Sequence record: ON529860.1
DNA: 64,000 nucleotides
Direction: 5' to 3' (one strand)
Part shown: in pieces, positions 80 to 19,456 of the stretch
Layout: every line of letters starts with the position of its first letter
Numbering within the stretch: position 1 is the first letter of the stretch
The notes under the pieces: model-generated
What the model was told of the DNA's origin: nothing
The model's database searches: none
The model's input: the letters and a program-made list of their open reading frames with translations, nothing else
Made by a program: the position numbers and the translations under genes

Positions 80-343
80 TCAGGCGCGGTTCGGCGGCGT
101 ATACGGCATGGGGCGCAGCCGAGGCTCGGCGCGCGGATGACTGATTCCGGTCGGCATGATGTTCAATTGCAGCCCGGCGCCCCGACGCAGCAGCATCATG
201 AGATCATGGGCGCGCACCGCCTCGGCCGGCGCGGCGAATGTCAGTTCGATCAGCACGCGATTGCTGTCGGTGCTGCACGCGGTCGCGATCTGGTCAGGCT
301 CCAGGTCCAGAGCCTGCGTGGGACTGATGTTGAGCCGGCTCAT
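80..343 (-). CDS. hypothetical protein (87 aa)
   Basis: 3' end of track ORF 80..1030; ATG at 341-343 overlaps the def stop codon (ATGA coupling). Confidence 0.6.
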   Translation of the reverse strand: MSRLNISPTQALDLEPDQIATACSTDSNRVLIELTFAAPAEAVRAHDLMMLLRRGAGLQLNIMPTGISHPRAEPRLRPMPYTPPNRA

Positions 344-882
344 GCGCGTGTCATCCGACGCACGTTGTCCTGGTGCTTCTTCAGCAGCATCGCCCGCTTC
401 AGCGACGAGACCCGGTCGATGTTGCGCACCCCGTCCAGGTGGTCCATCTCGTGCTGAAGGCAGATGGCCTTGTAACCCTTGCCCGACACGGTCTGCATAC
501 GGCCGTGAATGTCCTGGTATTCGACCGTCACTTCCCGATGCCGTCGCACGCGGAAAAAGACGCCCGGCATGGACAGGCATCCCTCCGGCATCTCGATCAT
601 GTCCTCGGACTTGTCGATGAACGTGGGGTTGATCAGGATCAGTTTGGGGCGATCGACCATGACGTCTTGCACCGGCAGTCCGGTGTCGGGCAGGTCGATC
701 ATGGTGAAGATGCGCAAGGGCACGCCGACCTGAACGGCGGCGAGCCCCGCGCCCTCGGCCATCAACATGGTGTCGACCATGTCGAAGCAAAGCGCCCGCA
801 CCTCGTCGGTGATCTCGAAGACCGTATCGGAGGGCTTCGTCATCAAGGCGTCGGTGCAGGGAATGATCTGACGCAGGGACAT
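340..882 (-). CDS. def: peptide deformylase
   Basis: Motifs GAGLAAVQ, EGCLS and HEMDH. Confidence 0.95.
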   Translation of the reverse strand: MSLRQIIPCTDALMTKPSDTVFEITDEVRALCFDMVDTMLMAEGAGLAAVQVGVPLRIFTMIDLPDTGLPVQDVMVDRPKLILINPTFIDKSEDMIEMPEGCLSMPGVFFRVRRHREVTVEYQDIHGRMQTVSGKGYKAICLQHEMDHLDGVRNIDRVSSLKRAMLLKKHQDNVRRMTRA

Positions 883-2123: not shown

Positions 2124-3011
2124 TTACAAAGTCACGATCAGGCGGGGATTGAAGTTCGGGTTCAGTTCATGCCCGACATAGCCGCGAGGATTGCAGATCA
2201 CGCGGGTCTCGCCGATCTGGTAGTCGCTGCTGTCATGCATGTGACCATGCGCCCACAAGGCGGGCTCCCACTCCAAAATCAGCGGCTCCAGCCGCGACGC
2301 ATAGGCGGGGTTCAGCGGCGATCCCCGATAACGAGGATGGCTCGACTGCTCCGACGGCGCATGGTGGGAGATCACCACGGTCGGGCCGTCATGAGGAACC
2401 CGTAGCGTTTCCGTCAGGAAGAAGCGGCTTTCCAGATGAAGGCGCCGCGTGTCGTCCGCCGTCAGGCGCTGCTGCTGCTTCAGTTCGATCTGCCGATAGT
2501 CGTTCATGTCCGACTGGGCGTGCCGGATCGACAAGGGCCAGGTCCCATAGAGGTCGAAATCGGTCCACAGGGTGGCGCCGAGGAAACGCACGTCGCCAAC
2601 ATGGACCTGCTCGTTATCCATGACGAAGACGCGGGCGGGCGCCAGTTCGTCAGCCTTGGCCTTCATCTTCTCGATGTGGCGGTGGTAGCGCCGCTTGCCG
2701 TAGAACTCGTGATTGCCCGGAACATAGAGGCAGGGGACGTCAGGGAAATGTCGCGCCAGCCAGATCACGCCGACGACGCCCGTCGCCAGGTCGCCGGCGG
2801 CGATGACCACGTCGATCTCGTCAGCCGAGGGCGCCGTCCAGGTGCGACGGTCCATGCCGCCGAACTCCAGATGGAGGTCCGACAGGATCAGGGCGCGCAA
2901 CGGCCGCCGTCCGGGCGTCCGCCGCGCCAGGCCGGCTTCGATGTCAGCCTGCATGTCGGCCGCAGCCGCCACAGTGAACTCCATCTCAGCCTTGCTCCAC
3001 TTGGTCTCCAT
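2124..3011 (-). CDS. calcineurin-like metallophosphoesterase
   Basis: SDLHLE, AGD, GNHE, SHH and HGHMH motifs. Confidence 0.92.
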   Translation of the reverse strand: METKWSKAEMEFTVAAAADMQADIEAGLARRTPGRRPLRALILSDLHLEFGGMDRRTWTAPSADEIDVVIAAGDLATGVVGVIWLARHFPDVPCLYVPGNHEFYGKRRYHRHIEKMKAKADELAPARVFVMDNEQVHVGDVRFLGATLWTDFDLYGTWPLSIRHAQSDMNDYRQIELKQQQRLTADDTRRLHLESRFFLTETLRVPHDGPTVVISHHAPSEQSSHPRYRGSPLNPAYASRLEPLILEWEPALWAHGHMHDSSDYQIGETRVICNPRGYVGHELNPNFNPRLIVTL

Positions 3012-3833: not shown

Positions 3834-3922
3834 TGGCGGATGGGGCAGGGATCGAACCCGCGTAACCCTCTCGGGTGTCGACCGCTTAGCAAGCGGCTGC
3901 CTTACCTCTCGGCCACCCATCC
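3834..3922 (-). tRNA. tRNA-Ser(GCT)
   Basis: Cloverleaf, long variable arm, G73, encoded CCA. Confidence 0.95.
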
Positions 3923-3929
3923 GGGGTGT

Positions 3930-4014
3930 TGGCGGTGCGCCAGGGAATCGAACCCTCAACCTTGCGGTCGGCGACGGTTTTCAAGGCCGCTTGTCCCCAT
4001 GGACGCTGCGCACC
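3930..4014 (-). tRNA. tRNA-Ser(TGA)
   Basis: CT-TGA-AA loop, long variable arm, encoded CCA. Confidence 0.88.
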
Positions 4015-4019
4015 GAAGG

Positions 4020-4111
4020 TGGCGGACGGCACGCGATTCGAACGCGTGGGACCCCAGGGGGTCCGCCTGCCTTCCAAGCAGGTGCCTTAAGCCGGGCTCA
4101 GCCAGCCGTCC
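4020..4111 (-). tRNA. tRNA-Ser(GGA)
   Basis: CCTGC-TTGGAAG-GCAGG arm, long variable arm, CCA. Confidence 0.93.
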
Positions 4112-4116
4112 GGTGT

Positions 4117-4334
4117 TGGTGGAGGCGAGGGGATTCGAACCCCCGTAGACGCCGAACCCTCGCATTACCGAGGGCCGATCTCAGGTTTAGAACGCGTGTG
4201 CCGCCCTGACCATCTTCCGCAGGCCAGGGGGTCTATCGTAACGACCCCGTCGATCGGTTGCCTCTGCGTCCCGGATTTACCCGGACCGTTGTTCTGTTCC
4301 ACGGTGCTCATGCCGAAACCCGAGCGACGCCCCC
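4117..4334 (-). ncRNA. compact one-piece tmRNA-like RNA (218 nt)
   Basis: 5' GGGGGCG pairs with 3' CGCCTCC-A-CCA giving G3.U70 and A73; GGTTTCG D-loop analogue; GGGGG-TTCGAAT-CCCCT T-arm; ~140-nt multi-hairpin interior in place of an anticodon arm. Confidence 0.7.
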
Positions 4335-4343
4335 GTGAAGAAA

Positions 4344-4431
4344 TGGAGGATGGTGTGGGATTCGAACCCACGGAACCTTGCGGTCCACCGGTTTTCGAAA
4401 CCGGCGCGATCGGCCTCTCCGCCAACCATCC
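4344..4431 (-). tRNA. tRNA-Ser(CGA)
   Basis: CCGGT-TTCGAAA-ACCGG arm, long variable arm; U73. Confidence 0.9.
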
Positions 4432-4438
4432 AGAACAG

Positions 4439-4627
4439 TCAGGCCGAGGCCGGACTGTAGTTGTCGATGTCGTCGACCCGGATCGCCGTGCCCGCCGCAA
4501 TCTGGCGGTCCGCGCTCAACAGTTCGGCGACCAGGTCGTCGGCCGTGACGGCGGCGCCGGAGGTGGCGAACTTCACGTTCACCAGGCGGCCGTCAGCGAA
4601 CATCTCGTCGATCGCGGCGCGATCCAT
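4439..4627 (-). CDS. hypothetical protein (62 aa)
   Basis: MDRAAIDEMF start with an AAGG SD, lying between tRNA genes. Confidence 0.6.
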   Translation of the reverse strand: MDRAAIDEMFADGRLVNVKFATSGAAVTADDLVAELLSADRQIAAGTAIRVDDIDNYSPASA

Positions 4628-4660: not shown

Positions 4661-4731
4661 TGGTGGAGACAGTGGGGCTCGAACCCACCAAGGCGTCCTT
4701 GCAAAGGATGCCTGCGCCCTGCGCTGTCCCC
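4661..4731 (-). tRNA. tRNA-Ala(TGC), short D-arm
   Basis: G3.U70, A73, TT-TGC-AA loop, 71 nt. Confidence 0.85.
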
Positions 4732-9786: not shown

Positions 9787-10397
9787 CAGAGGAACCGCAG
9801 GGAAACAACGTGGTGTTGAGGAATGGACGACCAGGGCGACATGGTCTGGACATGCTCCACAATCAGGTTCGACGTCGTGGGCGTCGTCTCGATCGTATAA
9901 TGCCCCGGCTCCAGCCAGCGGTCGAAACCTGGCTCCAGGGTCATGGCGCCGTTGATCGCGAAGTCGTGCGTTTCGAGCAGGAGCCCTTTCACATCGAACA
10001 GACGCGCAGTGAGCGTGCCCGTGCCGCCGTTGCTGCGCAGCCGCATCGCGATCAGTCGAGCCGGCTCGGCCAGAGCGATCGTCGTCGTGCGGACAATGCC
10101 GCCGAAGGGCAGGAAGCCGACCGCCACCGGCGCGCAGCCCGGCAGCACCCAGACCTTGCGGTCCATGGGACGCCCGCCGCCGCCTGCCTGAAGCGGGCCA
10201 TGCTCGACGCCTTCGGGCGTCATCAGGCGGACGTCGTCGCCCCCCAGGGCGCGTTCCGGCAGAAGCGGCACGCTCATGTCAAAGGAGTCCTGACCGACGC
10301 CCAGGATGCGCGCTTCTCGGTCAATCGTCAGTTCGCCCGGCGCGCGAGGCTCGACCGGGCTCACCTCGAACGGCGTGAGGTAGATGGTATCAGGCAT
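9786..10397 (-). CDS. putative virion fibre-associated protein
   Basis: TGATG coupling to the giant gene; related beta domain (GGTGTLTARLFD...LEPGHY). Confidence 0.7.
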   Translation of the reverse strand: MPDTIYLTPFEVSPVEPRAPGELTIDREARILGVGQDSFDMSVPLLPERALGGDDVRLMTPEGVEHGPLQAGGGGRPMDRKVWVLPGCAPVAVGFLPFGGIVRTTTIALAEPARLIAMRLRSNGGTGTLTARLFDVKGLLLETHDFAINGAMTLEPGFDRWLEPGHYTIETTPTTSNLIVEHVQTMSPWSSIPQHHVVSLRFL

Positions 10398-13300
10398 CAG
10401 GCGGTCGCCCACACATAGGCCAGAGCCGACGCCTCGCGGGAGGTCGGCGTCGGCGCGTCCAACAAGGAGCCCGTATCGGGCGCGGCGGGATCACCCACCA
10501 TCGTCATATCAGCGGCGAAGGCCGTCGGGCCGCGTCGGGCCGACAGCGTGGGAGCGGCGCCGGTGACGGCGATCATGGCGGCGTGCCACCCTGCTTCCAG
10601 CACCACGTCCTGGTCCACGGACTTCGGTCCGGTAGGTCCGGAGGCCGACACCTGCACGCTCACGGCGACATCGCCGGGCATTTGAAGCGCCTGGTCCCAA
10701 CGACAGACGCCGAACCGGATCGTGCCGGCCGACGCCGCAGTGATCGTGACGCCGAAACGGGTGAACCGGGTCGTGCGCGGCAGGAAGAACGGACGATAGA
10801 CCACCTTGCCGACGGGCGGCTGGTTGGCCGAAGCGTCCATGCCGAAGTCGGTCAGATAGCGATCGCCCACGCGCGCTGGCAACAGCACCGGCGCATCGTA
10901 GACGGGGTCCGGCGCGCGCCAGGTTCCGTCCGCATAGAGGATGTCCCCAGGCTCGCCGCCCTCGGGAGCCACGCCGCCCAACGCGATACGGCCCAGGGGC
11001 CGCGCCTGCATGACGCCGTAACCGTCGGTCGCGAAGAGGAGACCATCCGTCTCGTTCAGCGCAATTTCCAGCGGCTCAAGCGCGATGGGGACATTGCCGC
11101 GCACCAGGGTGCGTTTGTAGCGGATGACCACGCCGCCCGACCCCGAGACGTGCACCCCGTCGCCATCTTCGACATAGCCTTCGACCGGTTGGAGATAGAC
11201 CGTCGGCAAGGGCGCCGACGCCGAGGTTCCGCCCGCGCCTTCCGATTCCGGCGGAGAGACGAGGATGACGGAATCACTCAGGTCGCCGTCGACGACCGCC
11301 GCCGTCAGTTCGGCGGCGAAACCGCGCGGCGGCGTCACGTAGATGCGGTCGAAGTAGTTGATGCGGACGGTGGCGCTGCGGCTGAACGAGGCCAGCGGCG
11401 TGCCGACCAGGATCAGGCCGAGGTCGCGAGACACGCTCGCGGTCACTTCGACCAGGGGGTCTCCGTTCATGCCGACCGCGATCGTGACGAGAGGACCGCC
11501 CTGAGGCCCCGCACTGACGATGGCGTTGGCCGCGCCCGTCGCTCCGCCCGTGGCGAAGGCGATCGTGATGTCGTTCTCGAACGGCTCGGTGGTGTAAGGA
11601 ATGGGCAGTTCGCCCAACCCTGCCAGCGGCACGATCTGAACCGGCGCGCCGAAATCGCCGTCGGCCGTTTCATCGGGACCGCTCAGGTCGCCCTGGGGCG
11701 CCTGGAGCGTGACCACGCCCAGGAACTGACCCGGCTGCGGAGCCCAACCGGCATTGCCCTCGGCGGAGCCTTCAGGCGCCGTCAGCGGGATGACGCTGTC
11801 GATCTCACCGATCCACATGTCGGCGACGCCCATCTCGCCCTCGATCTCGGAGAGAGCGATCACCAGAGGGTCGAACATCTCGAAGCCGTTGCCGAGAATG
11901 TAGTTCATCGGCTGGAGCGTGACCGTCAGGGTCTGGTCCAGTTTGAGATCGACGCCGGCCTCCAGGCCCACGGACGGCGGGAAGGGATAGGCGAGGTCCT
12001 CGCCGATCCCCGTCACCACCAGGGCGTCGTTCTGAGGCTGACCGCCCAGATCACCCGAGACGTAGATGGTCGGCAAATAGGCGCCGATGCCGCCTGCGGC
12101 CTTGGCCTGCGGGTCCATCATCAGGATGGATTCGCCCAGGTCACCCGAACCTTGAGCGCCCATGGCGATGGCGCCGACCGGCGGAACGACGGTGACAACC
12201 GGCAAGGAACCGACCGCGTCTCCGGCTTTCGATCCCTCGCCCGATCCCGACGCCGAGGTCACCAGAACCGTGCCGATCTGCGTGACGTTGAACGTCACCG
12301 GGATGGACAGTTCACCCTCGAACACCGACAGAGCGGCCAGGCCAGGCCCGCCCGCCATGCCGGGCACGATGGCGAAGTTGGGCACCCCGCCCAGGCCGAC
12401 GCCGGACTGATACACCGGATTGGTGGTCCCAGCAGGCGTGCCCGTCGCGGACGTCTCCGTGACCCCCTCCAGGAGGAGGTCGCCCAGGAAGCCGGAGCCG
12501 CCGCCGGCTGATCCCGACGTCGATCCGCTGTTGAGCGCGCCGCCGCCGCCGCCGTAGTAGCCGCCGCCGCCGCCTGCGCCGGTCGCACCCACGCCGCTCG
12601 CGCCCACGACGCTTTCGCTGCCGTCGATCTGGAACCCGTCGCCGCCGCGAAGATAGGCTCCGTTGCCGTTGCCGCTGGTGTTCGACGCGCCTACGCCGCC
12701 CGCTGACTGCGTGCCGCCCGTGCCCATGCCTTGCGCCGTTCCGACGCCGTTGCCGCCGGACAGACCGCCACCGAACCCGCCGCGACGGGCCGCCGTCGCC
12801 GCCCCCGCGCCGCCTCCGCCGACGACCGCCACCAAGACGCCATTACGCCAGACGCGGGTCGAGCCGCCGCCCGCACCGCCGCCGTAGGTTCCCGGTCCGC
12901 CGCCGCCGCCGTCGGGCCAACCGCCCAGGCTGCCCGTGAAGTTGCCCGGCGAAGAGCCGCCTTGGCCCACTTCAATGCGAATGAGGTCGCCCGGCTGGAA
13001 CATGACGACGCCGGTCAAGTGACCGCCCGCGCCGCCGATCGAGTCCTGGGCGATCGTGTTGGTGTAAAGCTGCGAGCCTGCGCCGCCGCCGCCCCACAGG
13101 TTCAGATTGACGCCGCCGCTGAAGGTGGTGATGAAATCTCGGGGACCATAAACGTCGCCCAGCAGCGAGAGCGCGCCTTCCGGCAACGGCGCGATCGACG
13201 CGCCGGGCGTAAAGTCGAGAACCGCCCGGCCGTCGCCGCCGGGAAGGATCGCCGCCTTCGTCGCCTGGACGCCGCCCACGCCCACGCCCGCCGCATAATC

Positions 13301-16300
13301 CGCGTCGCCCGTCGCCGGGGGATTGGCCCCGACACCGCCCGCGAGGCGGTAGTTGAGCGCCAAGGGGCCGCCGTAGCTGGAACCGCCGCCGGCGCCCCCG
13401 GCTGAGGTCGCCGCCAGATTGGTGCCAGCGGCTCCGCCGTAATAGCCGCCGCCGCCGCCCGGACCCGCGTTAAGGCCTGCGGCCGTATCAGGGGTCGACC
13501 CATCCGGATAGCCCTGCCCGCCCGACAGATATGCGCCGGACGAAATCGAGCCCACCGCCCGCCCGCGCAGAAGCCCGCCACGATAATCTCGGCCGCCGTT
13601 GCCGACGGTGGTCGCCGGACCCGCGCCGGGAAGGCCGATACGACCGCCGGCCGCACCGCCGTCGCCCGGCACAGCAGCCGAATACCAGCTATTGGCTCCG
13701 CCGCCGCCGCCTGCGACGAGTTGCAGCACGCCGTTGATCCAGACCCGCGAGGAGCCGCCGCCCGAGCCCGCCAGGCTGGTGCCGGCGGCTTCATACTTGC
13801 CGCCCCGTCCGCCGTCGGGCCAGCCGCCAAGGCCAGAGACCGTATCCGTGGGCGCCGGGACGCCGCCGCCCGAGGCGACATCCACACGGACCACGTCGCC
13901 CGGCTTGACCAGGAACTCCGCGAGGCTGAAGGCGCCCGCACCGGCGACCGAGGGCGTGGTCACCGAGGGGCGAACGGCGGCGGAGCCGCCAGCGCCCCAC
14001 AGCTTGACCTTGAGGAGACCGGCGGTGGTGACGTTGAACAGGCGTTCAGAACGGTTCGAACCATACGCGGTCTTGCCGGTCGGCAGATCGACCGGAACCA
14101 GGTAGTTGAGGATCGCGAGACCGTCGCCGCCAGGCGCGGGGTTCTGCGCCAGCGTGGACGTTCCGGCGGAGCCCTGGGCCGTGCCCAGCACGAAGCCCGG
14201 CACGGCGGTTCCGCCCAGGCCGACGACGCTTTCGCCGTTGGCGGGCGTCAGGTGAGAGCCGCCCCCAGCCGAGCCGGCGGCCGTCGCCGCATTCAAGGAG
14301 GAGCCGCCGCCGCCGCCGTAGTAGCCGCCGCCGCCGCCCGGACCCATGCCCAGGCCGATGCCGTTAGAGCCGAGGCTGTATCGGGCGTTGCCGACGCCGA
14401 AGCCGTTGCCGCCCCGGAGGCTGGAGCCTGCGTAGGTGGTGTCGGTCGGATAACCCGTGTTGACGCCGCCGGAGACCTGAGTGCCGCCGGTTCCGGGCTT
14501 CAGATTGGCGTTGCTCGCCGGTCCGCCGTCCGCGCCGCCGCCGGCGCCGCCAGCCACTGCGACACTGGAGCCGCCGCCACCGCCGCCACCGCCGCCGGCC
14601 ACCATGACCAGGACGTCGTTCTTGTAAAGCCGCGTGGAGCCGCCGCCGCCGCCGTAACCCGTCAGGGCGGAGATGCGCGCGCCGTCGCCGCCGTCGGGCC
14701 AACCGCCTTGACCGCCGCCCGCCGTCGCGAAGGGACGACCGCCTTGTCCGACTTCAACCCGCAGCGTGTCGCCGGGCACGACTTCAATGGCGGCGCGCGT
14801 GTAGCCTCCGTCGCCGCCAGGGCGGAAGGTGCCGACCGTCGCGCCGGAGCCGGCGCCGCCCCACAGGTTGACGTTGACCGTCCCCTTCTGGGAGATGGTG
14901 ATGGTCCGGGCCGTCGCCGTGTGGCCGAAGACGTTGTTGCCCAGAACCAGGGTCGTCGGCTGGAGCGGGATCGCCGCCGGGGTCTCATCAAAGCGGATGA
15001 AGACCTGACCATCGCCGCCCTCAGTCACCCAGGGCTGGGTCAGCGTCGCCGATGCGCTGGCCGGACGCGCAACGCCCGAGACGTATTCCGGCAGGTCCGC
15101 GCTGGGAGGGGTGAACCCGCTGCCGGCCGCATTGGTGCCGTTGAGCGGGGTCAGCGACGAGCCGCCGCCCGCACCGCCCGCACCCGTGACGGCGCCTGCG
15201 ACCGTGTCGCAGCCGCCGGCTCCGCCGTAATAGCCGCCGCCGCCGCCGGGGCCGGTGCCCTCGCCGACCGAAGCGTTGGAGCCCCCGACCGGATAGCCGT
15301 GACCGCCCTTCAGGTAGTCGCCGGCGTAGGAGGCGTCCGTCGTGTAAAGCTTGTTGACGCCGCCCGCCGTCTGCGTGCCGCCGCCACCGACGGCGAAGTT
15401 GGCGTTGGAGGCCGGAGCACCATCCTGACCCGTCTCGCCGCCGCCTGCGCCGCCCTGGGCCGTATTGATGCCCGCGCCGCCCGCACCGCCGCCGGCGGCG
15501 ACCGCCAGCAGACTGCTGTTGAGATAGACGCGGGTCGAGCCGCCGCCGCCGCCCCAACCGATCGCCGCCGAGCCCATGCCGCCGTTGCCGCCGTCGGGCC
15601 AGCCGCCCAGGCCGCCGGTCGTTGCCGTGGGGCCTCGACCGCCCTGCGCCACCTGGAAGCTGAGCGTGTCGCCGGGCACGACGTCGCGCGTGAACGAGAC
15701 CATGCCGGCCGCGCCGCCGTTGGCGAGCGTTCCCGTGCCCGCGACGCCGCCGGCGCCGCCGCCCCAGGCGCGGACCGTCACCTTGCCAGGCTTGGTGGCG
15801 ACCCAGGTCTGATTGACGGCACCGGCGTAAAGCAGGGTCCGTTCGGGCGCGACCGTTTGTTGGGCGACCAGAGCCAGGACCGCAAGACCATTGCCGCCGT
15901 GCGTCGTCGACGAGAGGTTGGACGTGCCGTTGCCGCTGGCCGCGACGCCGGCGACGTAGTCGGGGTCCGAAGCGTTCGGAACGCCGTTGGAGCCGGTGTT
16001 GTTCGCGCCGCCGGCCTCGGTTCCACCGGTCTTGCCGTTGTTCCAGCGTCGCGTGTAGCCGTCGTAGCCCGCATGGATGTAACTGGAGCCGCCGCCGGAG
16101 CCCGCGCCCGATCCACCCGAACCGCCGCCATAGTAACCGCCGCCGCCGCCGCCGCCGTTGCGCGTGTCCGCCGTGGTCCGGTTTTGCCCGACGCCGTATC
16201 CGTGACCGCCGCGCAGCAGGCCGCCCGTCGCGGCCGCATCACCGTAGCGACCGACCGCATAGCCGCCCGCCGCCTGGGTGCCGCCCGCGCCGTAGTTGCT

Positions 16301-19300
16301 GCTGCCGCCGTGTTCGCCGTAGTAGTAGCCGCCGGAGCCGCTGAAGAAGGCGCCGCCGACGCCGCCGCCCGCACCGGCGACCGCGACCAGAACGTCGTTG
16401 ACGTAGATGCGCGTCGAGCCGCCGCCGCCGCCACCGCAATAGGTCGAGGAGGCGTAGCCGCCGTCGCCGCCGTCGGGCCAGCCGCCGAGGCCGCCTTCGG
16501 TGGTCACAGCCGGCTTGCGCCCGCCTTGCCCGACTTCAACCCGAACCGTGTCGTTGGCCTTGACGGGGATGGCGACATGCGTGAAGCCGCCCGCGCCCGC
16601 ATAGCGCGTGCCGGAGTTGGCGTAGCCGCCGGCTCCGCCGCCGCCCCACAACTTGGCCTCCAGAATGCTGTCGGCCGCGACCTTGTATTCAACCGGCGCG
16701 CCCCGGAAGGCGAGCGAAATCTTGGAGGGGAGTTCCGGCGTAGCGGCCGGAGGGCCGAGGTCGAGAACCGCGCGGCCGTTGCCGCCGGGCAGAGCCTGGT
16801 CAGTGGGTCCGCCCTGGACGGAGCCGGCCGCGACGCCCGTGACGTAGTCCGGGTCCAGCGCCCGAGGGGGGTTCTGGGCCAGGCCCATCTCGGTGACGCC
16901 GTTATCGACAGCCGGGTGCAGGAAGGACGAGCCGCCGCCCGCGCCGCTGGAGGTCGAGGACGCCAGGCCAGACGAACCGCCGCCGCCGTAGTAGCCGCCG
17001 CCGCCGCCCGCGCCGACGGTGCCCGAGGCGTTGGAGACTTCGACCGGCACTGAGGTGCTGCCGCCCGAGCCGCCCCGGAGGTATCCGCCCGAAGAGACCG
17101 CATCAGCCCCCCGCGCCATGCAGACGCCGCCGGCCGTCTGTGATCCGCCCGTTCCACGCACGCCGCCGGCCTCATCGCCGTCGGCCCCCGTCAGGCCGCC
17201 GCCCGCGCCGCCGTAACCGCGCGAGGCGGTCGTATTCTCGTGGACGTTGCCGCCGCCGCCGCCGGCCGCGACCGCCACCAGGGCGCCGTTCTTGTAGATG
17301 CGCGTGGAGCCGCCGCCCGCGCCCGCAGACCGCGAGGTGGCGAAGAACCCGCCAGGGCCGCCATCAGGCCAGCCGCCGACCGACGGCCCGGAACCGATGG
17401 CCCCCGTGTTGGCGCCGCCCGCGCCGACTTCCACCGTCAGGATGTCGCCGGCCTTAAACCGAATCACGCCCGACACGAAGCCGCCAGGGCCGCCGTAACT
17501 CAGCGGTCGGGTAGCGACAATCGACGCCCCGGAGCCCCCGCCGCCCCACAGTTTGAACGCGAGGTCCGAGGTCTCGGTGACCTCGTAGGATTTGGCGAAG
17601 CCTTCAAAGGGCAGCACGAACTTGCCGCGCCCCACGGGGGTCGGCGGATCGATCGCCATGACGACCACGCGGCCGTCGCCGCCGGGGACGCCGACGCCGC
17701 GATTGCTGCCGAATGCGGCGCGACCGGCCGCCTTGCCGCCGCGATCCGAATCCGAAGCCGCGCCAGGCGCGCCCGTCGTGATGACGCCCGTTTCCGTCAG
17801 GCCGTCGACCACGGAGGGATGAATATAGGAAGAGCCGCCGCCCGCGCCGCCGCCGGGGATGAAGGTGCCGGTGCTGGCGCTGCCCGAGCCGCCGTAGTAG
17901 CCGCCGCCGCCGCCCGCGCCGGAGTTGACGGAGTTCGAGGAAATCGTCTCCCCTACGGTCGAGTCGTAGCCGTCGCCGCCGCGCGCGCCAACGCCGTTGA
18001 ACGCCGGTTTGAACGGACTGACCCCAGGTCCGGTTTGCGAGCCGCCGATGCCGCGATAGGAATCGTTGGTGTAGTCAAGCGTGGCGTTGTTGGCTGCGTA
18101 GCCGTTCTGCCCGATCAGCCCGCCTCCGGGGCCGCCGTAGCCGCCGCTGGCGTAGCCCATGCCGGAGCCGCCGCCGCCGCCCGCGACCAGCATGATGACG
18201 CCGTTGACCTTGACGATCGTCGCGCCGCCGCCGCCGCCGAGTTGCCCGACGGTGAAATACTTGGCGCCGTTGCCGCCGTTCGGCCAGCCGCCAAAGCCGC
18301 CGCGCTCGGAACCGGTGCGGCCGTCGCCACCCTGCCCGCCCTGGGCGACGGAAATCTCGACCAGGTCGCCCGTGACAAGCGCGATCTTACCACGCACGAA
18401 GCCGCCGCCGCCCGACGCGCCGCCGAGCGCTGCGCTGCCGTCCGAACGGTGAGCCGGCGCACCGGCGCCGCCCCAGGCCTTGATGTCGAGCGTGGTGTTG
18501 CGGTCCGCCACGAAGGACTTGACCGCGCCCGTGAAGTCCAGGGTGGTCTTGCCCGGCGGAATCGGCGGGATGACCACGGCCGCGATGGTGAGCACCGCCA
18601 GGCCGTTGCCGCCAGGCAGCGCCATGACGCCAGTCGAACCGTTGTCGGCGCCCACGGCGACGCCCGCGACGTAATCCGCATCATCAGTCTTGGGCGCAGT
18701 CTTGCCCGCTCCGGCGACGTTGAGCGGGGTCGCGACCGACGCGTGGAGGAAGGACGAGCCGCCGCCGGCGCCCGAGGACAGGTTGGTGGTCCACTGACCG
18801 GCGCCGGCGCCGCCGCCATAGTAGCCGCCGCCGCCGCCGCCGCCGTTGCGGTTGTCGGCGTTGGCGACGAATCCGGAGCCGCCGCGCAGAGAGCCTCCCT
18901 GCTTGGCGGGCATATTGCTGGGATTGGAGAAGCCGCCGGCCGACTGCGTGCCGCCAAGGCCGGCCCAGCCCGCCTGGCCGAAGCCGTCTTGACCCACGAG
19001 GCCGCCGCCAGCGCCGGAGTAACCCAGGGCCACCGTCGTGCCGGTTTCGTTGTGGTTGGCCCCGCCGCCGCCGCCCGCAACCGCGACCAGGACGTTGTTC
19101 ACATAGAGGCGCGTGGAGCCGCCGCCGCCGCCTGCGGCGCGAATGGTGAAAGCGTATCCGCCCACGCCGCCGTCGGGCCAACCGCCGGGGGAGACCGCAG
19201 CGCCCGTGAGAGGATCAGTCCGCCCGCCCCCGCCGACTTCGATCTTGATCGTGTCGCCCGCCGCCACCACGACCTCGCCCGACACAAAGCCGCCGGCGCC

Positions 19301-19456
19301 GCCGTAGCCGACACGAGGCGCGATGTTGGAGGCGTTGGAGCCGCCGCCGGCGCCGCCCCACAGCTTGAACGACAGGGCTCCGCCCGTGGCGATCGTGTAG
19401 GTCTGCGCCACGCCCGAGTAGGGATGCGAAGACTTACCGGAGGGGAGATCAGCCAT
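10397..19456 (-). CDS. 3019-aa Gly-rich fibre/filament protein with 8 ALK/LTK-type glycine-rich domains
   Basis: Eight ~290-aa units, each with (L/A)WG, GGWP(D/N)GG, GGGGG(S/A)(T/S), GGGGGYYGG and GGGSS/GGGSG/GGGSH motifs; acidic Pro-rich stalk; C-terminal beta domain. Confidence 0.85.
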   Translation of the reverse strand: MADLPSGKSSHPYSGVAQTYTIATGGALSFKLWGGAGGGSNASNIAPRVGYGGAGGFVSGEVVVAAGDTIKIEVGGGGRTDPLTGAAVSPGGWPDGGVGGYAFTIRAAGGGGGSTRLYVNNVLVAVAGGGGGANHNETGTTVALGYSGAGGGLVGQDGFGQAGWAGLGGTQSAGGFSNPSNMPAKQGGSLRGGSGFVANADNRNGGGGGGGYYGGGAGAGQWTTNLSSGAGGGSSFLHASVATPLNVAGAGKTAPKTDDADYVAGVAVGADNGSTGVMALPGGNGLAVLTIAAVVIPPIPPGKTTLDFTGAVKSFVADRNTTLDIKAWGGAGAPAHRSDGSAALGGASGGGGFVRGKIALVTGDLVEISVAQGGQGGDGRTGSERGGFGGWPNGGNGAKYFTVGQLGGGGGATIVKVNGVIMLVAGGGGGSGMGYASGGYGGPGGGLIGQNGYAANNATLDYTNDSYRGIGGSQTGPGVSPFKPAFNGVGARGGDGYDSTVGETISSNSVNSGAGGGGGYYGGSGSASTGTFIPGGGAGGGSSYIHPSVVDGLTETGVITTGAPGAASDSDRGGKAAGRAAFGSNRGVGVPGGDGRVVVMAIDPPTPVGRGKFVLPFEGFAKSYEVTETSDLAFKLWGGGGSGASIVATRPLSYGGPGGFVSGVIRFKAGDILTVEVGAGGANTGAIGSGPSVGGWPDGGPGGFFATSRSAGAGGGSTRIYKNGALVAVAAGGGGGNVHENTTASRGYGGAGGGLTGADGDEAGGVRGTGGSQTAGGVCMARGADAVSSGGYLRGGSGGSTSVPVEVSNASGTVGAGGGGGYYGGGGSSGLASSTSSGAGGGSSFLHPAVDNGVTEMGLAQNPPRALDPDYVTGVAAGSVQGGPTDQALPGGNGRAVLDLGPPAATPELPSKISLAFRGAPVEYKVAADSILEAKLWGGGGAGGYANSGTRYAGAGGFTHVAIPVKANDTVRVEVGQGGRKPAVTTEGGLGGWPDGGDGGYASSTYCGGGGGGSTRIYVNDVLVAVAGAGGGVGGAFFSGSGGYYYGEHGGSSNYGAGGTQAAGGYAVGRYGDAAATGGLLRGGHGYGVGQNRTTADTRNGGGGGGGYYGGGSGGSGAGSGGGSSYIHAGYDGYTRRWNNGKTGGTEAGGANNTGSNGVPNASDPDYVAGVAASGNGTSNLSSTTHGGNGLAVLALVAQQTVAPERTLLYAGAVNQTWVATKPGKVTVRAWGGGAGGVAGTGTLANGGAAGMVSFTRDVVPGDTLSFQVAQGGRGPTATTGGLGGWPDGGNGGMGSAAIGWGGGGGSTRVYLNSSLLAVAAGGGAGGAGINTAQGGAGGGETGQDGAPASNANFAVGGGGTQTAGGVNKLYTTDASYAGDYLKGGHGYPVGGSNASVGEGTGPGGGGGYYGGAGGCDTVAGAVTGAGGAGGGSSLTPLNGTNAAGSGFTPPSADLPEYVSGVARPASASATLTQPWVTEGGDGQVFIRFDETPAAIPLQPTTLVLGNNVFGHTATARTITISQKGTVNVNLWGGAGSGATVGTFRPGGDGGYTRAAIEVVPGDTLRVEVGQGGRPFATAGGGQGGWPDGGDGARISALTGYGGGGGSTRLYKNDVLVMVAGGGGGGGGGSSVAVAGGAGGGADGGPASNANLKPGTGGTQVSGGVNTGYPTDTTYAGSSLRGGNGFGVGNARYSLGSNGIGLGMGPGGGGGYYGGGGGSSLNAATAAGSAGGGSHLTPANGESVVGLGGTAVPGFVLGTAQGSAGTSTLAQNPAPGGDGLAILNYLVPVDLPTGKTAYGSNRSERLFNVTTAGLLKVKLWGAGGSAAVRPSVTTPSVAGAGAFSLAEFLVKPGDVVRVDVASGGGVPAPTDTVSGLGGWPDGGRGGKYEAAGTSLAGSGGGSSRVWINGVLQLVAGGGGGANSWYSAAVPGDGGAAGGRIGLPGAGPATTVGNGGRDYRGGLLRGRAVGSISSGAYLSGGQGYPDGSTPDTAAGLNAGPGGGGGYYGGAAGTNLAATSAGGAGGGSSYGGPLALNYRLAGGVGANPPATGDADYAAGVGVGGVQATKAAILPGGDGRAVLDFTPGASIAPLPEGALSLLGDVYGPRDFITTFSGGVNLNLWGGGGAGSQLYTNTIAQDSIGGAGGHLTGVVMFQPGDLIRIEVGQGGSSPGNFTGSLGGWPDGGGGGPGTYGGGAGGGSTRVWRNGVLVAVVGGGGAGAATAARRGGFGGGLSGGNGVGTAQGMGTGGTQSAGGVGASNTSGNGNGAYLRGGDGFQIDGSESVVGASGVGATGAGGGGGYYGGGGGALNSGSTSGSAGGGSGFLGDLLLEGVTETSATGTPAGTTNPVYQSGVGLGGVPNFAIVPGMAGGPGLAALSVFEGELSIPVTFNVTQIGTVLVTSASGSGEGSKAGDAVGSLPVVTVVPPVGAIAMGAQGSGDLGESILMMDPQAKAAGGIGAYLPTIYVSGDLGGQPQNDALVVTGIGEDLAYPFPPSVGLEAGVDLKLDQTLTVTLQPMNYILGNGFEMFDPLVIALSEIEGEMGVADMWIGEIDSVIPLTAPEGSAEGNAGWAPQPGQFLGVVTLQAPQGDLSGPDETADGDFGAPVQIVPLAGLGELPIPYTTEPFENDITIAFATGGATGAANAIVSAGPQGGPLVTIAVGMNGDPLVEVTASVSRDLGLILVGTPLASFSRSATVRINYFDRIYVTPPRGFAAELTAAVVDGDLSDSVILVSPPESEGAGGTSASAPLPTVYLQPVEGYVEDGDGVHVSGSGGVVIRYKRTLVRGNVPIALEPLEIALNETDGLLFATDGYGVMQARPLGRIALGGVAPEGGEPGDILYADGTWRAPDPVYDAPVLLPARVGDRYLTDFGMDASANQPPVGKVVYRPFFLPRTTRFTRFGVTITAASAGTIRFGVCRWDQALQMPGDVAVSVQVSASGPTGPKSVDQDVVLEAGWHAAMIAVTGAAPTLSARRGPTAFAADMTMVGDPAAPDTGSLLDAPTPTSREASALAYVWATA

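What the first reader, a model, noticed from the sequence alone, without database searches (positions are those of the whole stretch)
4117..4334. 218-nt one-piece tmRNA-like RNA without an obvious degradation tag
Seen: Ala identity (G3.U70, A73, CCA), a tmRNA-type 5' end GGGGGCG...GGTTTCG and a GGGGGTTCGAATCCCC T-arm. The interior has hairpins GGGGTC/GACCCC, CCTGGCC/GGTCAGG and CCCTCG/CGAGGG, and a CCGATC/GATCGG long-range pair. Established: alphaproteobacterial tmRNA is circularly permuted and two-piece, ~350 nt, with tags ending in -AA for ClpXP. This RNA is unpermuted and much shorter. None of its three interior frames ends in -AA (they end PEIGPR, TGSLR and RAAHAF). Inference: it may free stalled ribosomes without marking phage proteins for proteolysis, or act as an SmpB/AlaRS decoy.
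Basis: partly seen in the sequence, partly recalled or inferred. Interest (0 to 1): 0.75.

Follow-up and report, generated by a model that had tools for sequence, protein, structure and literature searches.

The report
Alanine tRNA-like RNA with structured insert
A 218-base RNA gene hidden inside the tRNA cluster of a giant Brevundimonas phage has the top half of an alanine tRNA, but carries a conserved, folded 136-base domain where a normal tRNA has a short loop; it is a real, undescribed RNA family resembling the ribosome-rescue RNA tmRNA in layout but not in its defining details.

Summary
On the minus strand at 4334→4117 lies an unannotated 218-nt RNA with a perfect alanine-type acceptor stem (G3·U70, A73, encoded CCA) and a canonical T-arm. 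It sits 9 nt and 5 nt from two tRNA-Ser genes. It is a real gene. Seven Brevundimonas jumbo phages carry it at 95-100% identity, and two unrelated metagenomic phage contigs carry it at 74-78%. Across these, 13 of 55 base pairs show compensatory changes. It is not a canonical tmRNA. ARAGORN and the Rfam thresholds miss it, it keeps a covarying D-stem that tmRNA lacks, and no reading frame is conserved. Two of its three invariant UAAs sit in GUAA hairpin loops. It is also not a decoding tRNA, because the anticodon-position hairpin has an 11-12-nt loop, and not an intron-containing tRNA. The layout is a tRNA-Ala cloverleaf body. A helix at the long-variable-arm position, where tmRNA helix H2 emerges, carries a multi-helix domain. 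That domain probably pairs back onto the anticodon-position loop. My best guess at function, which is inferred and untested, is a processed, alanine-chargeable, codon-independent tRNA mimic acting on ribosomes or trans-translation without a degradation tag. The main rival is a tRNA scaffold for an unrelated functional RNA domain.

The parts
4117..4334 (-). Whole 218-nt RNA. RNA position p corresponds to window coordinate 4335 - p.
   Evidence: Sequence. Unannotated in ON529860.1. CM R1 scores it at 274 bits. Conserved in 9 loci.
4328..4334 (-). Acceptor stem 5' strand GGGGGCG (pos 1-7)
   Evidence: Forms 7 pairs with 4121-4127, including G3.U70. Invariant in all 9 copies.
4117..4127 (-). Acceptor stem 3' strand CGCCUCC (pos 208-214), then discriminator A73 and encoded CCA (pos 215-218)
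   Evidence: The 28-nt 3' end is identical to bacterial tRNA-Ala(CGC) genes in L013, L015 and L016.
4306..4325 (-). D-arm (pos 10-29): stem GCUCG/UGAGC, loop GGUUUCGGCA with a GG...A pattern
   Evidence: Two compensatory pairs against L010 (U-A>C-G and C-G>U-A). UCGGCAU is invariant.
4286..4304 (-). Hairpin c at the anticodon-arm position (pos 31-49): 4-bp stem CCGU/ACGG and an 11-nt loop. The loop's 5' half GGAACAG (4294-4300) is invariant and its 3' half varies.
   Evidence: The loop is 12 nt in L017.
4271..4284 (-). Hairpin d (pos 51-64): CCGG/CCGG stem with a GUAAAU loop
   Evidence: one C-G>U.G change. The loop begins GUAA in all lineages.
4262..4270 (-). P2 5' strand (pos 65-73, GACGC-A-GAG). 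This helix leaves the tRNA body at the variable-arm position.
   Evidence: Pairs with 4148-4156. Three pairs show compensatory change and A-U>G.U occurs in 3 sequences.
4148..4156 (-). P2 3' strand (pos 179-187, UUC-G-GCGUC), followed by the UAC linker to the T-stem
   Evidence: UCUAC before the T-stem is invariant.
4252..4257 (-). P3 5' strand CCGAUC (pos 78-83), preceded by the conserved GCAA (4258-4261)
   Evidence: Four of 6 pairs show compensatory change. A soil variant has C79>U, giving a wobble.
4175..4180 (-). P3 3' strand GAUCGG (pos 155-160)
4228..4248 (-). P4 hairpin region (pos 87-107). The inner 4 bp GGUC/GACC are conserved. G87 and G88 more likely pair with C150 and C151.
   Evidence: The outer pairs are broken in Gurke and L017.
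4206..4227 (-). P5 hairpin (pos 108-129), CUGGCC/GGUCAG
   Evidence: One compensatory pair, U-A>C-G.
4184..4193 (-). Invariant single-stranded block GUUCUAAACC (pos 142-151). GUUCU is complementary to GGAAC of the hairpin-c loop, a candidate pseudoknot.
   Evidence: Invariant in all lineages. Duplex energy -6.3 kcal/mol in each. The pairs never vary, so covariation cannot test them.
4157..4174 (-). P6 hairpin (pos 161-178), CCCUCG/CGAGGG with the invariant loop GUAAUG
   Evidence: Three pairs show compensatory change, including within the Brevundimonas phages.
4128..4144 (-). T-arm (pos 191-207), GGGGG-UUCGAAU-CCCCU
   Evidence: Invariant.
4344..4431 (-). Upstream neighbour tRNA-Ser(CGA), with a 9-nt spacer to the RNA's 5' end
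4020..4111 (-). Downstream neighbour tRNA-Ser(GGA), 5 nt after the RNA's CCA

Best explanation
Shown: this is a genuine, selectively maintained RNA gene of large phages. It has a tRNA-Ala-type cloverleaf body: acceptor with G3.U70/A73/CCA, D-arm, a short hairpin at the anticodon-arm position, and a T-arm. The variable region is replaced by hairpin d plus a helix (P2) that carries a three-way-junction domain (P3-P6). Inferred: it is co-transcribed with the flanking tRNAs and cut out by the tRNA-processing enzymes RNase P and the 3' nucleases. It is then charged with alanine by the host AlaRS and bound by EF-Tu, because its acceptor/T minihelix is base-for-base that of a real bacterial tRNA-Ala. 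It has no 7-nt anticodon loop. The invariant GGAAC of its anticodon-position loop is predicted to pair with the invariant GUUCU of the inserted domain. That would make a roughly 9-bp closed 'lower limb' with no free anticodon. The RNA would therefore act as a codon-independent alanyl-tRNA mimic. Its layout is an all-RNA counterpart of tmRNA-SmpB: P2 takes the place of tmRNA helix H2, and the D-arm plus hairpin c take the place of SmpB. Most likely it enters, or competes for, ribosomal A sites that lack a codon. It would then either release stalled ribosomes without adding a proteolysis tag, or damp the host's own trans-translation during infection. Confidence that it is a real structured tRNA-Ala-like RNA family is about 0.95. 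Confidence in the ribosome/trans-translation function is about 0.35, and that is the figure given.
For: - Real gene: 95-100% identity in 7 phages, above the 88-89% of its flanks. Homologues at 74-78% identity occur in a 543-kb phage contig (L010) and in L017. In every case it lies inside a same-strand tRNA array.
- Structure: 13 of 55 pairs have compensatory change against 3.3 expected, and slid controls give at most 2.
- Alanine identity and processing signals: G3.U70, A73 and CCA are invariant, and spacers to the neighbouring tRNAs are 9 and 5 nt.
- Strong constraint on the tRNA half: all 35 acceptor/T-arm/ACCA columns are identical in three lineages, while only 55-58% of other columns are. 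The 3' 28-mer equals bona fide tRNA-Ala(CGC) genes.
- Cloverleaf body: with pos 50-185 removed in silico, the remaining 82 nt fold as a cloverleaf in all three lineages.
- No anticodon or tag: the loop is 11-12 nt and no frame is conserved.
- Precedents: a TLD-only phage tmRNA, and a similar molecule that strongly inhibits tmRNA (PMC4131195; PMC11915505). Huge phages carry tmRNA, SmpB and release factors (PMC7162821).
Against: - There are no data on expression, end-mapping or aminoacylation. The only RNA-library signal (run X7, contigs over 4110-4279) cannot be told apart from DNA carry-over.
- The GGAAC:GUUCU pairing is invariant, so covariation cannot test it.
- Its geometry differs from a codon-anticodon helix. 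GGAAC continues the 5' strand of the stem and there is no U-turn.
- Nothing shows ribosome binding.
- The RNA is rare and patchy. It was absent from phiCbK and CcrRogue arrays, from 80 related phage loci, from 50,697 phage genomes at BLAST sensitivity, and from 185,579 bacterial species genomes in the two specific motif patterns scanned. That is unusual for a core translation function.
- Invariance of the acceptor/T half might partly reflect exchange with tRNA-Ala genes.
Confidence: 0.35

Rival explanations
1. tRNA-scaffolded RNA. The functional part is the inserted P2-P6 domain, which would bind a protein, ligand or RNA unrelated to aminoacylation. The tRNA-like half would only ensure excision from the tRNA operon transcript by RNase P and 3' nucleases, and stability. 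This would be comparable to the stable RNAs C and D of phage T4, whose function is still unknown.
For: The inserted domain has its own invariant unpaired blocks (GCAA, GGCAC, GUUCUAAACC, and two GUAA-type hexaloops), typical of tertiary contacts or binding sites. The RNA is embedded in tRNA arrays next to different neighbouring tRNAs in each lineage, like a portable module. T4 RNAC and RNAD are 'RNAs of yet unknown functions' (PMC9697503).
Against: A mere processing handle should tolerate covariation. Yet all 12 acceptor and T-stem pairs, including the G3.U70 wobble, plus A73 and CCA are invariant across lineages that differ at 22-29% of positions. That points to sequence-specific readers such as AlaRS and EF-Tu.
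Confidence: 0.3
2. A true but minimal one-piece tmRNA. A short tag would be translated from the single-stranded stretch and ended at one of the invariant UAAs. One frame is ...UUC UAA at pos 143-148. The other is ...UCU AAA CCN... ending at the UAA in the P6 loop, which would resemble the stop codon in the tmRNA H5 loop. SmpB would be used as usual.
For: Invariant UAAs lie at pos 146 and 168. The P6 hairpin has UAA in its loop. Papperlapapp and L017 share GCA CAC GCG UUC UAA. tmRNAs with tags of only 2 aa exist (PMC11915505). Rfam tmRNA is the best-scoring family, although it falls below threshold.
Against: L010 has a 1-nt insertion between the conserved GGCAC and GUUCUAA, so neither frame is conserved from a common resume point. 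The predicted tails differ completely (PEIGPR, PKSSPW, PAAGLG; and AHAF, HPKF) and lack the usual hydrophobic -AA end. The differing codons lie in covarying helices P3 and P6. The UAA in P6 is part of a GUAA loop motif that also occurs in hairpin d next to the tRNA body, so it looks structural. A D-stem is present. No PK1 was identified. ARAGORN -m finds nothing.
Confidence: 0.1
3. A decoding tRNA with a giant variable arm. One candidate is anticodon CAG within the invariant GGAACAG, read from a 7-nt loop closed by G36-C44. That would insert Ala at CUG codons or act as a suppressor or frameshifter.
For: At a relaxed threshold, ARAGORN calls the insert-less 82-mer a tRNA and picks CAG in L010. 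The changes at C44 in Kikimora and Gurke are C>U, which would keep G36 paired as a wobble. tmRNA shows that a ribosome can accommodate a large appendage at the variable-arm position (PMC3968760).
Against: The calls are inconsistent (agc, cag, cagg) and are made only at -ps80. Position 33 would be A rather than the near-universal U. The stem would be 6 bp with a G x A mismatch. In L017 the 7-nt loop cannot form. Each array already has tRNA-Leu(CAG), and tRNA-Ala(UGC) is seen in the window and in L017. Ala at CUG would be proteome-wide mistranslation in a 65% GC genome.
Confidence: 0.04
4. A tRNA-Ala gene interrupted by an intron or mobile insertion that is spliced out to give an ordinary tRNA-Ala.
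For: The acceptor, D-stem and T-arm equal those of a real tRNA-Ala(CGC). Bacterial tRNA genes, including some in alphaproteobacteria, can carry group I introns (general knowledge).
Against: No Rfam group I or II intron hit appears even at E<=10. ARAGORN in intron mode finds nothing at default settings, and only mutually inconsistent calls when relaxed. No segment before the T-arm is complementary to the 5 nt after the D-arm, so no 5-bp anticodon stem with a 7-nt loop can be made by removing any internal piece (reading). About 136 nt is well below known group I sizes. The insert is conserved with covariation as part of the same fold.
Confidence: 0.03

Closest known systems
tmRNA (SsrA; Rfam RF00023), including phage-encoded copies
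   Same: It shares the alanine-type acceptor stem with G3.U70, A73 and CCA, and the canonical T-arm. A helix (P2) adjoins the T-arm through a short ..AC linker and projects from the variable-arm position like H2. It leads to a multi-helix, probably pseudoknotted domain. tmRNA genes are also encoded by large phages.
   Different: It is 218 nt rather than roughly 350. It retains a covarying D-stem and a hairpin at the anticodon-arm position, plus an extra hairpin d between the acceptor and P2. There is no conserved tag frame, no recognisable PK1-PK4, and it falls below the Rfam and ARAGORN thresholds.
TLD-only tmRNA of mycobacteriophage DS6A, and CDS-less organellar tmRNAs (PMC4131195, PMC11915505)
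   Same: It is phage-encoded, alanine tRNA-like and lacks a tag CDS. A similar TLD-only molecule strongly inhibits tmRNA, perhaps by titrating SmpB, which gives a plausible function as a modulator of host trans-translation.
   Different: Those RNAs are 'little more than the TLD' (the plastid CDS-less forms are about 65 bp). This RNA has a tRNA-type D-arm and a conserved domain of about 136 nt, so it is not simply a truncated tmRNA. I did not compare the DS6A sequence directly.
Canonical tRNA-Ala (e.g. the tRNA-Ala(CGC) genes in L013, L015 and L016)
   Same: The acceptor stem, D-stem GCUC/GAGC, T-arm and ACCA are identical. The cloverleaf body is recovered when the insert is removed in silico.
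   Different: There is no 5-bp anticodon stem with a 7-nt loop. The 5-nt variable loop is replaced by about 136 nt of structured RNA. It is not detected by the Rfam tRNA model at its gathering score or by ARAGORN.
Long-variable-arm (class II) tRNAs
   Same: An extra helix emerges between the anticodon-position arm and the T-arm.
   Different: Class II variable arms are single hairpins of about 10-25 nt. Here the arm is branched (hairpin d plus P2 with P3-P6) and is predicted to fold back onto the anticodon-position loop.
Phage T4 stable RNAs C and D (PMC9697503)
   Same: They are phage-encoded stable small RNAs of unknown function. Their linkage to the T4 tRNA gene cluster is from my own knowledge.
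   Different: No sequence or structure comparison was made here. The T4 RNAs are not known to carry alanine identity.

Membership tests
tmRNA (one-piece, RF00023) | Acceptor stem with G3.U70, discriminator A and CCA (alanine identity) | tested here: met
   GGGGGCG/CGCCUCC plus ACCA, invariant in 9 copies.
tmRNA (one-piece, RF00023) | tRNA-like T-arm | tested here: met
   GGGGG-UUCGAAU-CCCCU. It aligns to the T-arm of the tmRNA model.
tmRNA (one-piece, RF00023) | Reduced D-loop without a stem, which is the SmpB-binding surface (PMC3968760) | tested here: not met
   A 5-bp D-stem with two compensatory pairs is present, and the loop has a tRNA-type GG..A pattern.
tmRNA (one-piece, RF00023) | Internal tag reading frame with a resume codon and an in-frame stop, conserved among relatives | tested here: not met
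   No frame is conserved. There is a 1-nt indel in L010, and the tails are unrelated and lie in covarying helices.
tmRNA (one-piece, RF00023) | Helix 2 joining the TLD to the body, and pseudoknot PK1 upstream of the tag | tested here: inconclusive
   A P2 helix with covariation adjoins the T-arm. However, it is separated from the 5' acceptor strand by three hairpins, and no PK1 equivalent was identified. The candidate pseudoknots never vary.
tmRNA (one-piece, RF00023) | Detection by curated models | tested here: not met
   Rfam gives 32 bits against a cut-off of 47, with the wrong 5' end. The permuted model gives 17 bits. ARAGORN -m finds nothing down to -ps60.
tmRNA (one-piece, RF00023) | Alanylation, SmpB and EF-Tu binding, and trans-translation activity | not testable with these tools
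   These need biochemistry.
tRNA (RF00005) | Acceptor, D and T arms of a cloverleaf | tested here: met
tRNA (RF00005) | 5-bp anticodon stem with a 7-nt loop and U33 | tested here: not met
   The stem is 4 bp and the loop 11-12 nt. The best forced 7-nt loop has A33 and fails in L017.
tRNA (RF00005) | Detection at the Rfam gathering score or by ARAGORN defaults | tested here: not met
tRNA gene with a group I intron | Intron core recognisable, and exons that join into a canonical tRNA | tested here: not met
   No intron family scores at E<=10. ARAGORN -i finds nothing consistent. No anticodon stem can be formed.
TLD-only phage tmRNA (DS6A type) | [quoted passage not shown] | tested here: not met
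   There is no tag CDS, which fits. But the RNA is 218 nt with a conserved structured domain of about 136 nt and a tRNA-type D-arm.

The most novel reading that the evidence does not exclude
This would be an SmpB-independent, all-RNA ribosome-rescue molecule, a natural intermediate form between tRNA-Ala and tmRNA. Its own inserted domain would supply a codon-like strand (GUUCU) that pairs with the anticodon-position loop, so an A site without mRNA accepts it. After transfer of the nascent chain to alanine, the adjacent invariant UAA would be presented for release-factor termination. Stalled ribosomes would be freed with a single added Ala and no degradation tag, which would suit a phage that wants its truncated products and ribosomes spared.
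Probability: 0.08. Interest if true: 0.92.

Novelty: new variant of a known kind. Interest (0 to 1): 0.62.

Why it matters
Phage tRNA clusters are usually annotated automatically, and anything ARAGORN or tRNAscan misses stays invisible. The authors of these genomes reported that no tmRNA could be detected. This element shows that giant phages carry at least one more class of alanine-identity tRNA mimic. Its architecture, a tRNA body plus a structured domain at the variable-arm position, is what the tmRNA-SmpB complex imitates with protein. If it is charged and ribosome-active, it would be a new, tag-less way for a virus to manage stalled ribosomes or blunt host trans-translation. It would also be a living model for how tmRNA could have arisen from tRNA-Ala. 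If it is only a scaffold, it is a natural example of the tRNA-scaffold strategy, with an unknown cargo domain worth identifying. Either way it deserves an Rfam family, and covariance model R1 is a starting point.

Tried and rejected
- Standard detectors. ARAGORN at defaults, in tmRNA mode down to -ps60, and in intron mode made no consistent call. Rfam at gathering thresholds found nothing, and in E-value mode gave only a sub-threshold tmRNA hit with a misplaced 5' end.
- Searches for more homologues.
  - BLAST against 50,697 phage genomes, using both the Papperlapapp and L010 copies, found only the 7 Brevundimonas phages. Plasmids gave none.
  - Six DNA-pattern scans of IMG/VR returned only L010, plus the truncated L011.
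  - One metagenome scan gave L017, plus ordinary tRNA-Ala genes and an att-like fragment.
  - Two scans of one genome per bacterial or archaeal species found nothing.
  - The CM found nothing over the phiCbK and CcrRogue tRNA arrays, nor over 80 IMG/VR loci encoding relatives of the neighbouring metallophosphatase.
- Shared neighbour genes. Across the three lineages only the metallophosphatase is shared, and not in a fixed arrangement.
- Sequencing runs. Soil metagenomes hold a Kikimora-like variant, adding only C79>U (wobble), C75>A and loop changes. An RNA-virome run has contigs over part of the gene but cannot prove transcription.
- Promoter and terminator scan. It was uninformative.
- Sphingobium phage Lacusarx tmRNA as a comparator. 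It was not in the region fetched.
- Ideas considered by eye and dropped.
  - A sarcin-ricin-loop mimic in the P4 loop is not conserved in L010 or L017.
  - A kiss between the D-loop and the P5 loop would be 5 bp in two lineages but only 3 bp in L017, and it conflicts with the D-loop GG.
  - An alternative acceptor stem using the internal GGGGUCG, which is the Rfam alignment, is poorly conserved.
- Mao et al. 2009 (PubMed 19617710) is not held, so it is cited only through later papers.
Full report
**Identity and location**

The window is the start of Brevundimonas phage vB_BpoS-Papperlapapp (ON529860.1, 356,874 bp, Dolichocephalovirinae). Window and record coordinates coincide. The feature lies on the minus strand, 4334→4117. 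I number the RNA so that position p corresponds to coordinate 4335 - p.

It sits inside a same-strand tRNA array. It starts 9 nt after the CCA of tRNA-Ser(CGA) (4344-4431) and ends 5 nt before tRNA-Ser(GGA) (4020-4111). It is not annotated in any of the seven genomes that carry it. The authors of those genomes stated that ARAGORN detected no tmRNA (PMC10070969).

**Check of the observation**

- the acceptor GGGGGCG/CGCCUCC with G3·U70, followed by A73 and CCA;
- the T-arm GGGGG-UUCGAAU-CCCCU;
- the three hairpins and the CCGAUC/GAUCGG long-range pair.

The three frame tails (PEIGPR, TGSLR, RAAHAF) are reproduced. The minimum-free-energy fold of the single sequence uses most of these helices but is not significant alone (z = -1.79).

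**Conservation**

- Seven B. pondensis jumbo phages carry the element at 95.0-100% identity. In the two most distant, Kikimora and Gurke, the surrounding kilobase is only 88.6-89.5% identical.
- An exact-match scan with the 3' 28-mer found a 219-nt homologue in a 543,035-bp viral contig. This is L010, the same contig as L012.
- The same scan found a 214-nt homologue in metagenome contig Ga0196963_10003717 (L017).
- Pairwise identities are 74%, 78% and 71%.
- In both of these contigs the RNA again lies within a same-strand tRNA array, but between different tRNAs: Gln/Leu in L010 and Glu/Leu in L017.

Nothing comparable was found elsewhere:
- one genome for each of 185,579 bacterial and archaeal species, using two motif patterns;
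- plasmids;
- the other 50,690 phage records at BLAST sensitivity;
- the phiCbK and CcrRogue tRNA arrays;
- 80 IMG/VR loci encoding relatives of the neighbouring metallophosphatase.

Soil-metagenome runs hold a Kikimora-like variant.

**Secondary structure**

I built a covariance model (R1) and a structure-aware alignment of the nine copies, seven of them distinct (A4). Of 55 nested pairs, 96.6% of cells are standard pairs. Thirteen pairs have a change on both sides, against 3.3 ± 1.5 in shuffles (0 of 500 reach 13) and at most 2 when partners are slid by 1-3 columns.

| Helix | RNA positions | Note |
|---|---|---|
| Acceptor | 1-7 / 208-214 | invariant |
| D | 10-14 / 25-29 | two compensatory pairs |
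| Hairpin c | 31-34 / 46-49 | 11-12-nt loop |
| Hairpin d | 51-54 / 61-64 | GUAA-type loop |
| P2 | 65-73 / 179-187 | three compensatory pairs |
| P3 | 78-83 / 155-160 | four compensatory pairs |
| P4 | 89-92 / 102-105 | inner 4 bp conserved |
| P5 | 108-113 / 124-129 | one compensatory pair |
| P6 | 161-166 / 173-178 | three compensatory pairs, some within the Brevundimonas group |
| T | 191-195 / 203-207 | invariant |

P2b, P3 and P6 meet at a three-way junction whose only single-stranded linker is the conserved GCAA. Inside P3, G87-G88 with C150-C151 probably close a second junction carrying P4, P5 and a 20-nt single strand.

Blocks identical in all three lineages are:
- pos 1-9;
- UCGGCAU (D-loop);
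- GCACCGUGGAACA (28-40);
- CGGGUAA (52-58);
- GUUCUAAACC (142-151);
- GGUAAUGC (166-173);
- the last 33 nt.

All 35 acceptor/T-arm/ACCA columns are invariant, against 55-58% of the other columns.

**tRNA-type or tmRNA-type?**

[quoted passage not shown] This RNA keeps a D-stem with compensatory changes. Its D-loop reads A/G-R-...-GG-C-A, which is the tRNA pattern (established tRNA knowledge). Its acceptor stem, D-stem and T-arm are identical to those of ordinary bacterial tRNA-Ala(CGC) genes found by the same scan (L013, L015, L016).

When positions 50-185 are removed in silico, the remaining 82 nt fold as a cloverleaf in all three lineages. ARAGORN at 80% threshold then calls the whole piece a tRNA, though with inconsistent anticodons, and never a tmRNA.

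The body is therefore tRNA-Ala-derived. The resemblance to tmRNA lies in the layout. P2 leaves the body exactly where a long variable arm, or tmRNA H2, would, and it is joined to the T-stem by UAC (tmRNA has ..AC).

**No messenger part**

Three UAAs are invariant, at pos 56, 146 and 168. Those at 56 and 168 lie in hexaloops that both begin GUAA (hairpins d and P6). One of these hairpins sits next to the tRNA body, so a structural loop motif is the simpler reading.

The distance between the conserved GGCAC and GUUCUAA is 4 nt in Papperlapapp and L017 but 5 nt in L010. As a result neither frame is conserved from a common point.

The predicted C-terminal tails are unrelated in sequence. The codons that differ lie in the covarying helices P3 and P6. 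None ends in the usual -AA. A very short, non-degron tag cannot be strictly excluded with only three lineages.

**Not a decoding or intron-containing tRNA**

Hairpin c has a 4-bp stem and an 11-12-nt loop. The only way to force a 7-nt loop gives A33 and a 6-bp stem with a G×A mismatch, and it fails in L017.

No segment upstream of the T-arm can pair with the nucleotides after the D-arm to make an anticodon stem. No intron family scores even at E ≤ 10. ARAGORN's intron mode gives nothing consistent.

**Candidate tertiary pairing**

GGAAC (35-39), at the 5' side of the hairpin-c loop, is complementary to GUUCU (142-146). The duplex energy is -6.3 kcal/mol in each lineage. Because GGAAC directly continues the 5' strand of stem c, the two helices could stack into a rod of about 9 bp. 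That is roughly the length of an anticodon arm, but with no free anticodon.

Both strands are invariant, so covariation says nothing for or against this pairing. The variable, A-rich 3' half of the loop fits a loop that merely bridges.

**How it most likely works (inference)**

1. The RNA is co-transcribed with the array and excised by the tRNA-processing enzymes (short spacers, encoded CCA).
2. It is charged by AlaRS (G3·U70 and A73 are invariant) and bound by EF-Tu (its T-stem is that of a real tRNA-Ala).
3. It lacks an anticodon, its lower limb is made of RNA, and a large domain sits at the H2 position. It would therefore behave as a codon-independent alanyl-tRNA mimic, an all-RNA analogue of tmRNA-SmpB.
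4. I favour action at A sites without a codon. The outcome would be either tag-less rescue or competition with the host's two-piece tmRNA.

Precedents exist. Mycobacteriophage DS6A encodes a TLD-only tmRNA, and a similar molecule strongly inhibits tmRNA (PMC4131195; PMC11915505). Huge phages carry tmRNA, SmpB and release factors (PMC7162821).

None of these steps is shown here. There is no evidence yet for expression, charging or ribosome binding. The one RNA-library signal cannot be separated from DNA carry-over.

**Rivals**

The main rival is that the tRNA half is only a processing and stability scaffold for a functional inserted domain, as may be the case for T4 RNAs C and D, whose function is still unknown (PMC9697503). 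Total invariance of the acceptor/T half, including the G·U wobble, argues against a mere handle but does not exclude it. The minimal-tmRNA, decoding-tRNA and intron readings are each contradicted by a tested feature, as described above.

**Novelty**

The RNA matches no Rfam 15 family at threshold and is unannotated in GenBank. I found no description of it in the papers searched. I file it as a new variant within the known kind 'tRNA-/tmRNA-like RNAs of phages'. It fails membership tests for tmRNA, tRNA, the DS6A-type TLD-only RNA and intron-containing tRNA.

Noticed in passing
window 4661-4731 (-); also L008 4093-4163 and L009 4001-4071: The phage's tRNA-Ala(UGC) is only 71 nt. It has G3.U70 but no U8/N9 linker, a D-arm reduced to GCGC-AGG-GCGC without the GG, and an extended anticodon stem with one A x C mismatch. 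ARAGORN calls the same 71-nt type in phiCbK and CcrRogue, where the RefSeq records used here (NC_019405, NC_019408) leave it unannotated. Kikimora and Gurke carry a canonical 76-nt tRNA-Ala(UGC) instead.
   Followed up: partly
window 3930-4015 (-): This is a tRNA-Ser(UGA)-like gene that ARAGORN missed in this phage. Rfam's tRNA-Sec model gives 34.6 bits (cut-off 47), but the anticodon is UGA (serine), not UCA. It is annotated as tRNA-Ser only in Domovoi.
   Followed up: partly
L011 4658-4713 (-) (IMGVR_UViG_3300035563_000013, contig end): A second viral contig has the identical 28-nt T-arm plus acceptor 3' end, but a different upstream body (..GCUUAGUUCUGCAUUUU). It may be another member or a sister family, but the contig end cuts it off.
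   Followed up: no
window 2124-3011 (-); L017 1216-2157 (-): A metallo-dependent phosphatase-like gene lies near the tRNA array both in this phage and, at 28% identity, in L017. IMG/VR holds 272 relatives, several in contigs of 280-560 kb. A link to tRNA or RNA-end metabolism is possible but was not examined.
   Followed up: partly
window 340-882 (-): A phage-encoded peptide deformylase lies about 3 kb downstream of the tRNA array on the same strand. It is another translation-related function in this region.
   Followed up: no
L014 7250-7283 (-): This is a lone 3' half of the same tRNA-Ala type (T-arm plus acceptor plus CCA) without a 5' half. It looks like an integration-site (att) duplicate in a bacterial contig.
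   Followed up: no
window 10397-19456 (-): A single 9,060-bp ORF is annotated as a 'putative lectin-like domain protein', directly upstream of the tRNA array in the structural-gene block.
   Followed up: no
window 3834-4279 and 4402-4582, run X7: A small 'viral metagenome' RNA-Seq library (2.25 million letters) has contigs 90-99% identical to this tRNA region, including RNA positions 56-218. Whether this reflects transcripts, packaged RNA or DNA carry-over could not be decided.
   Followed up: partly
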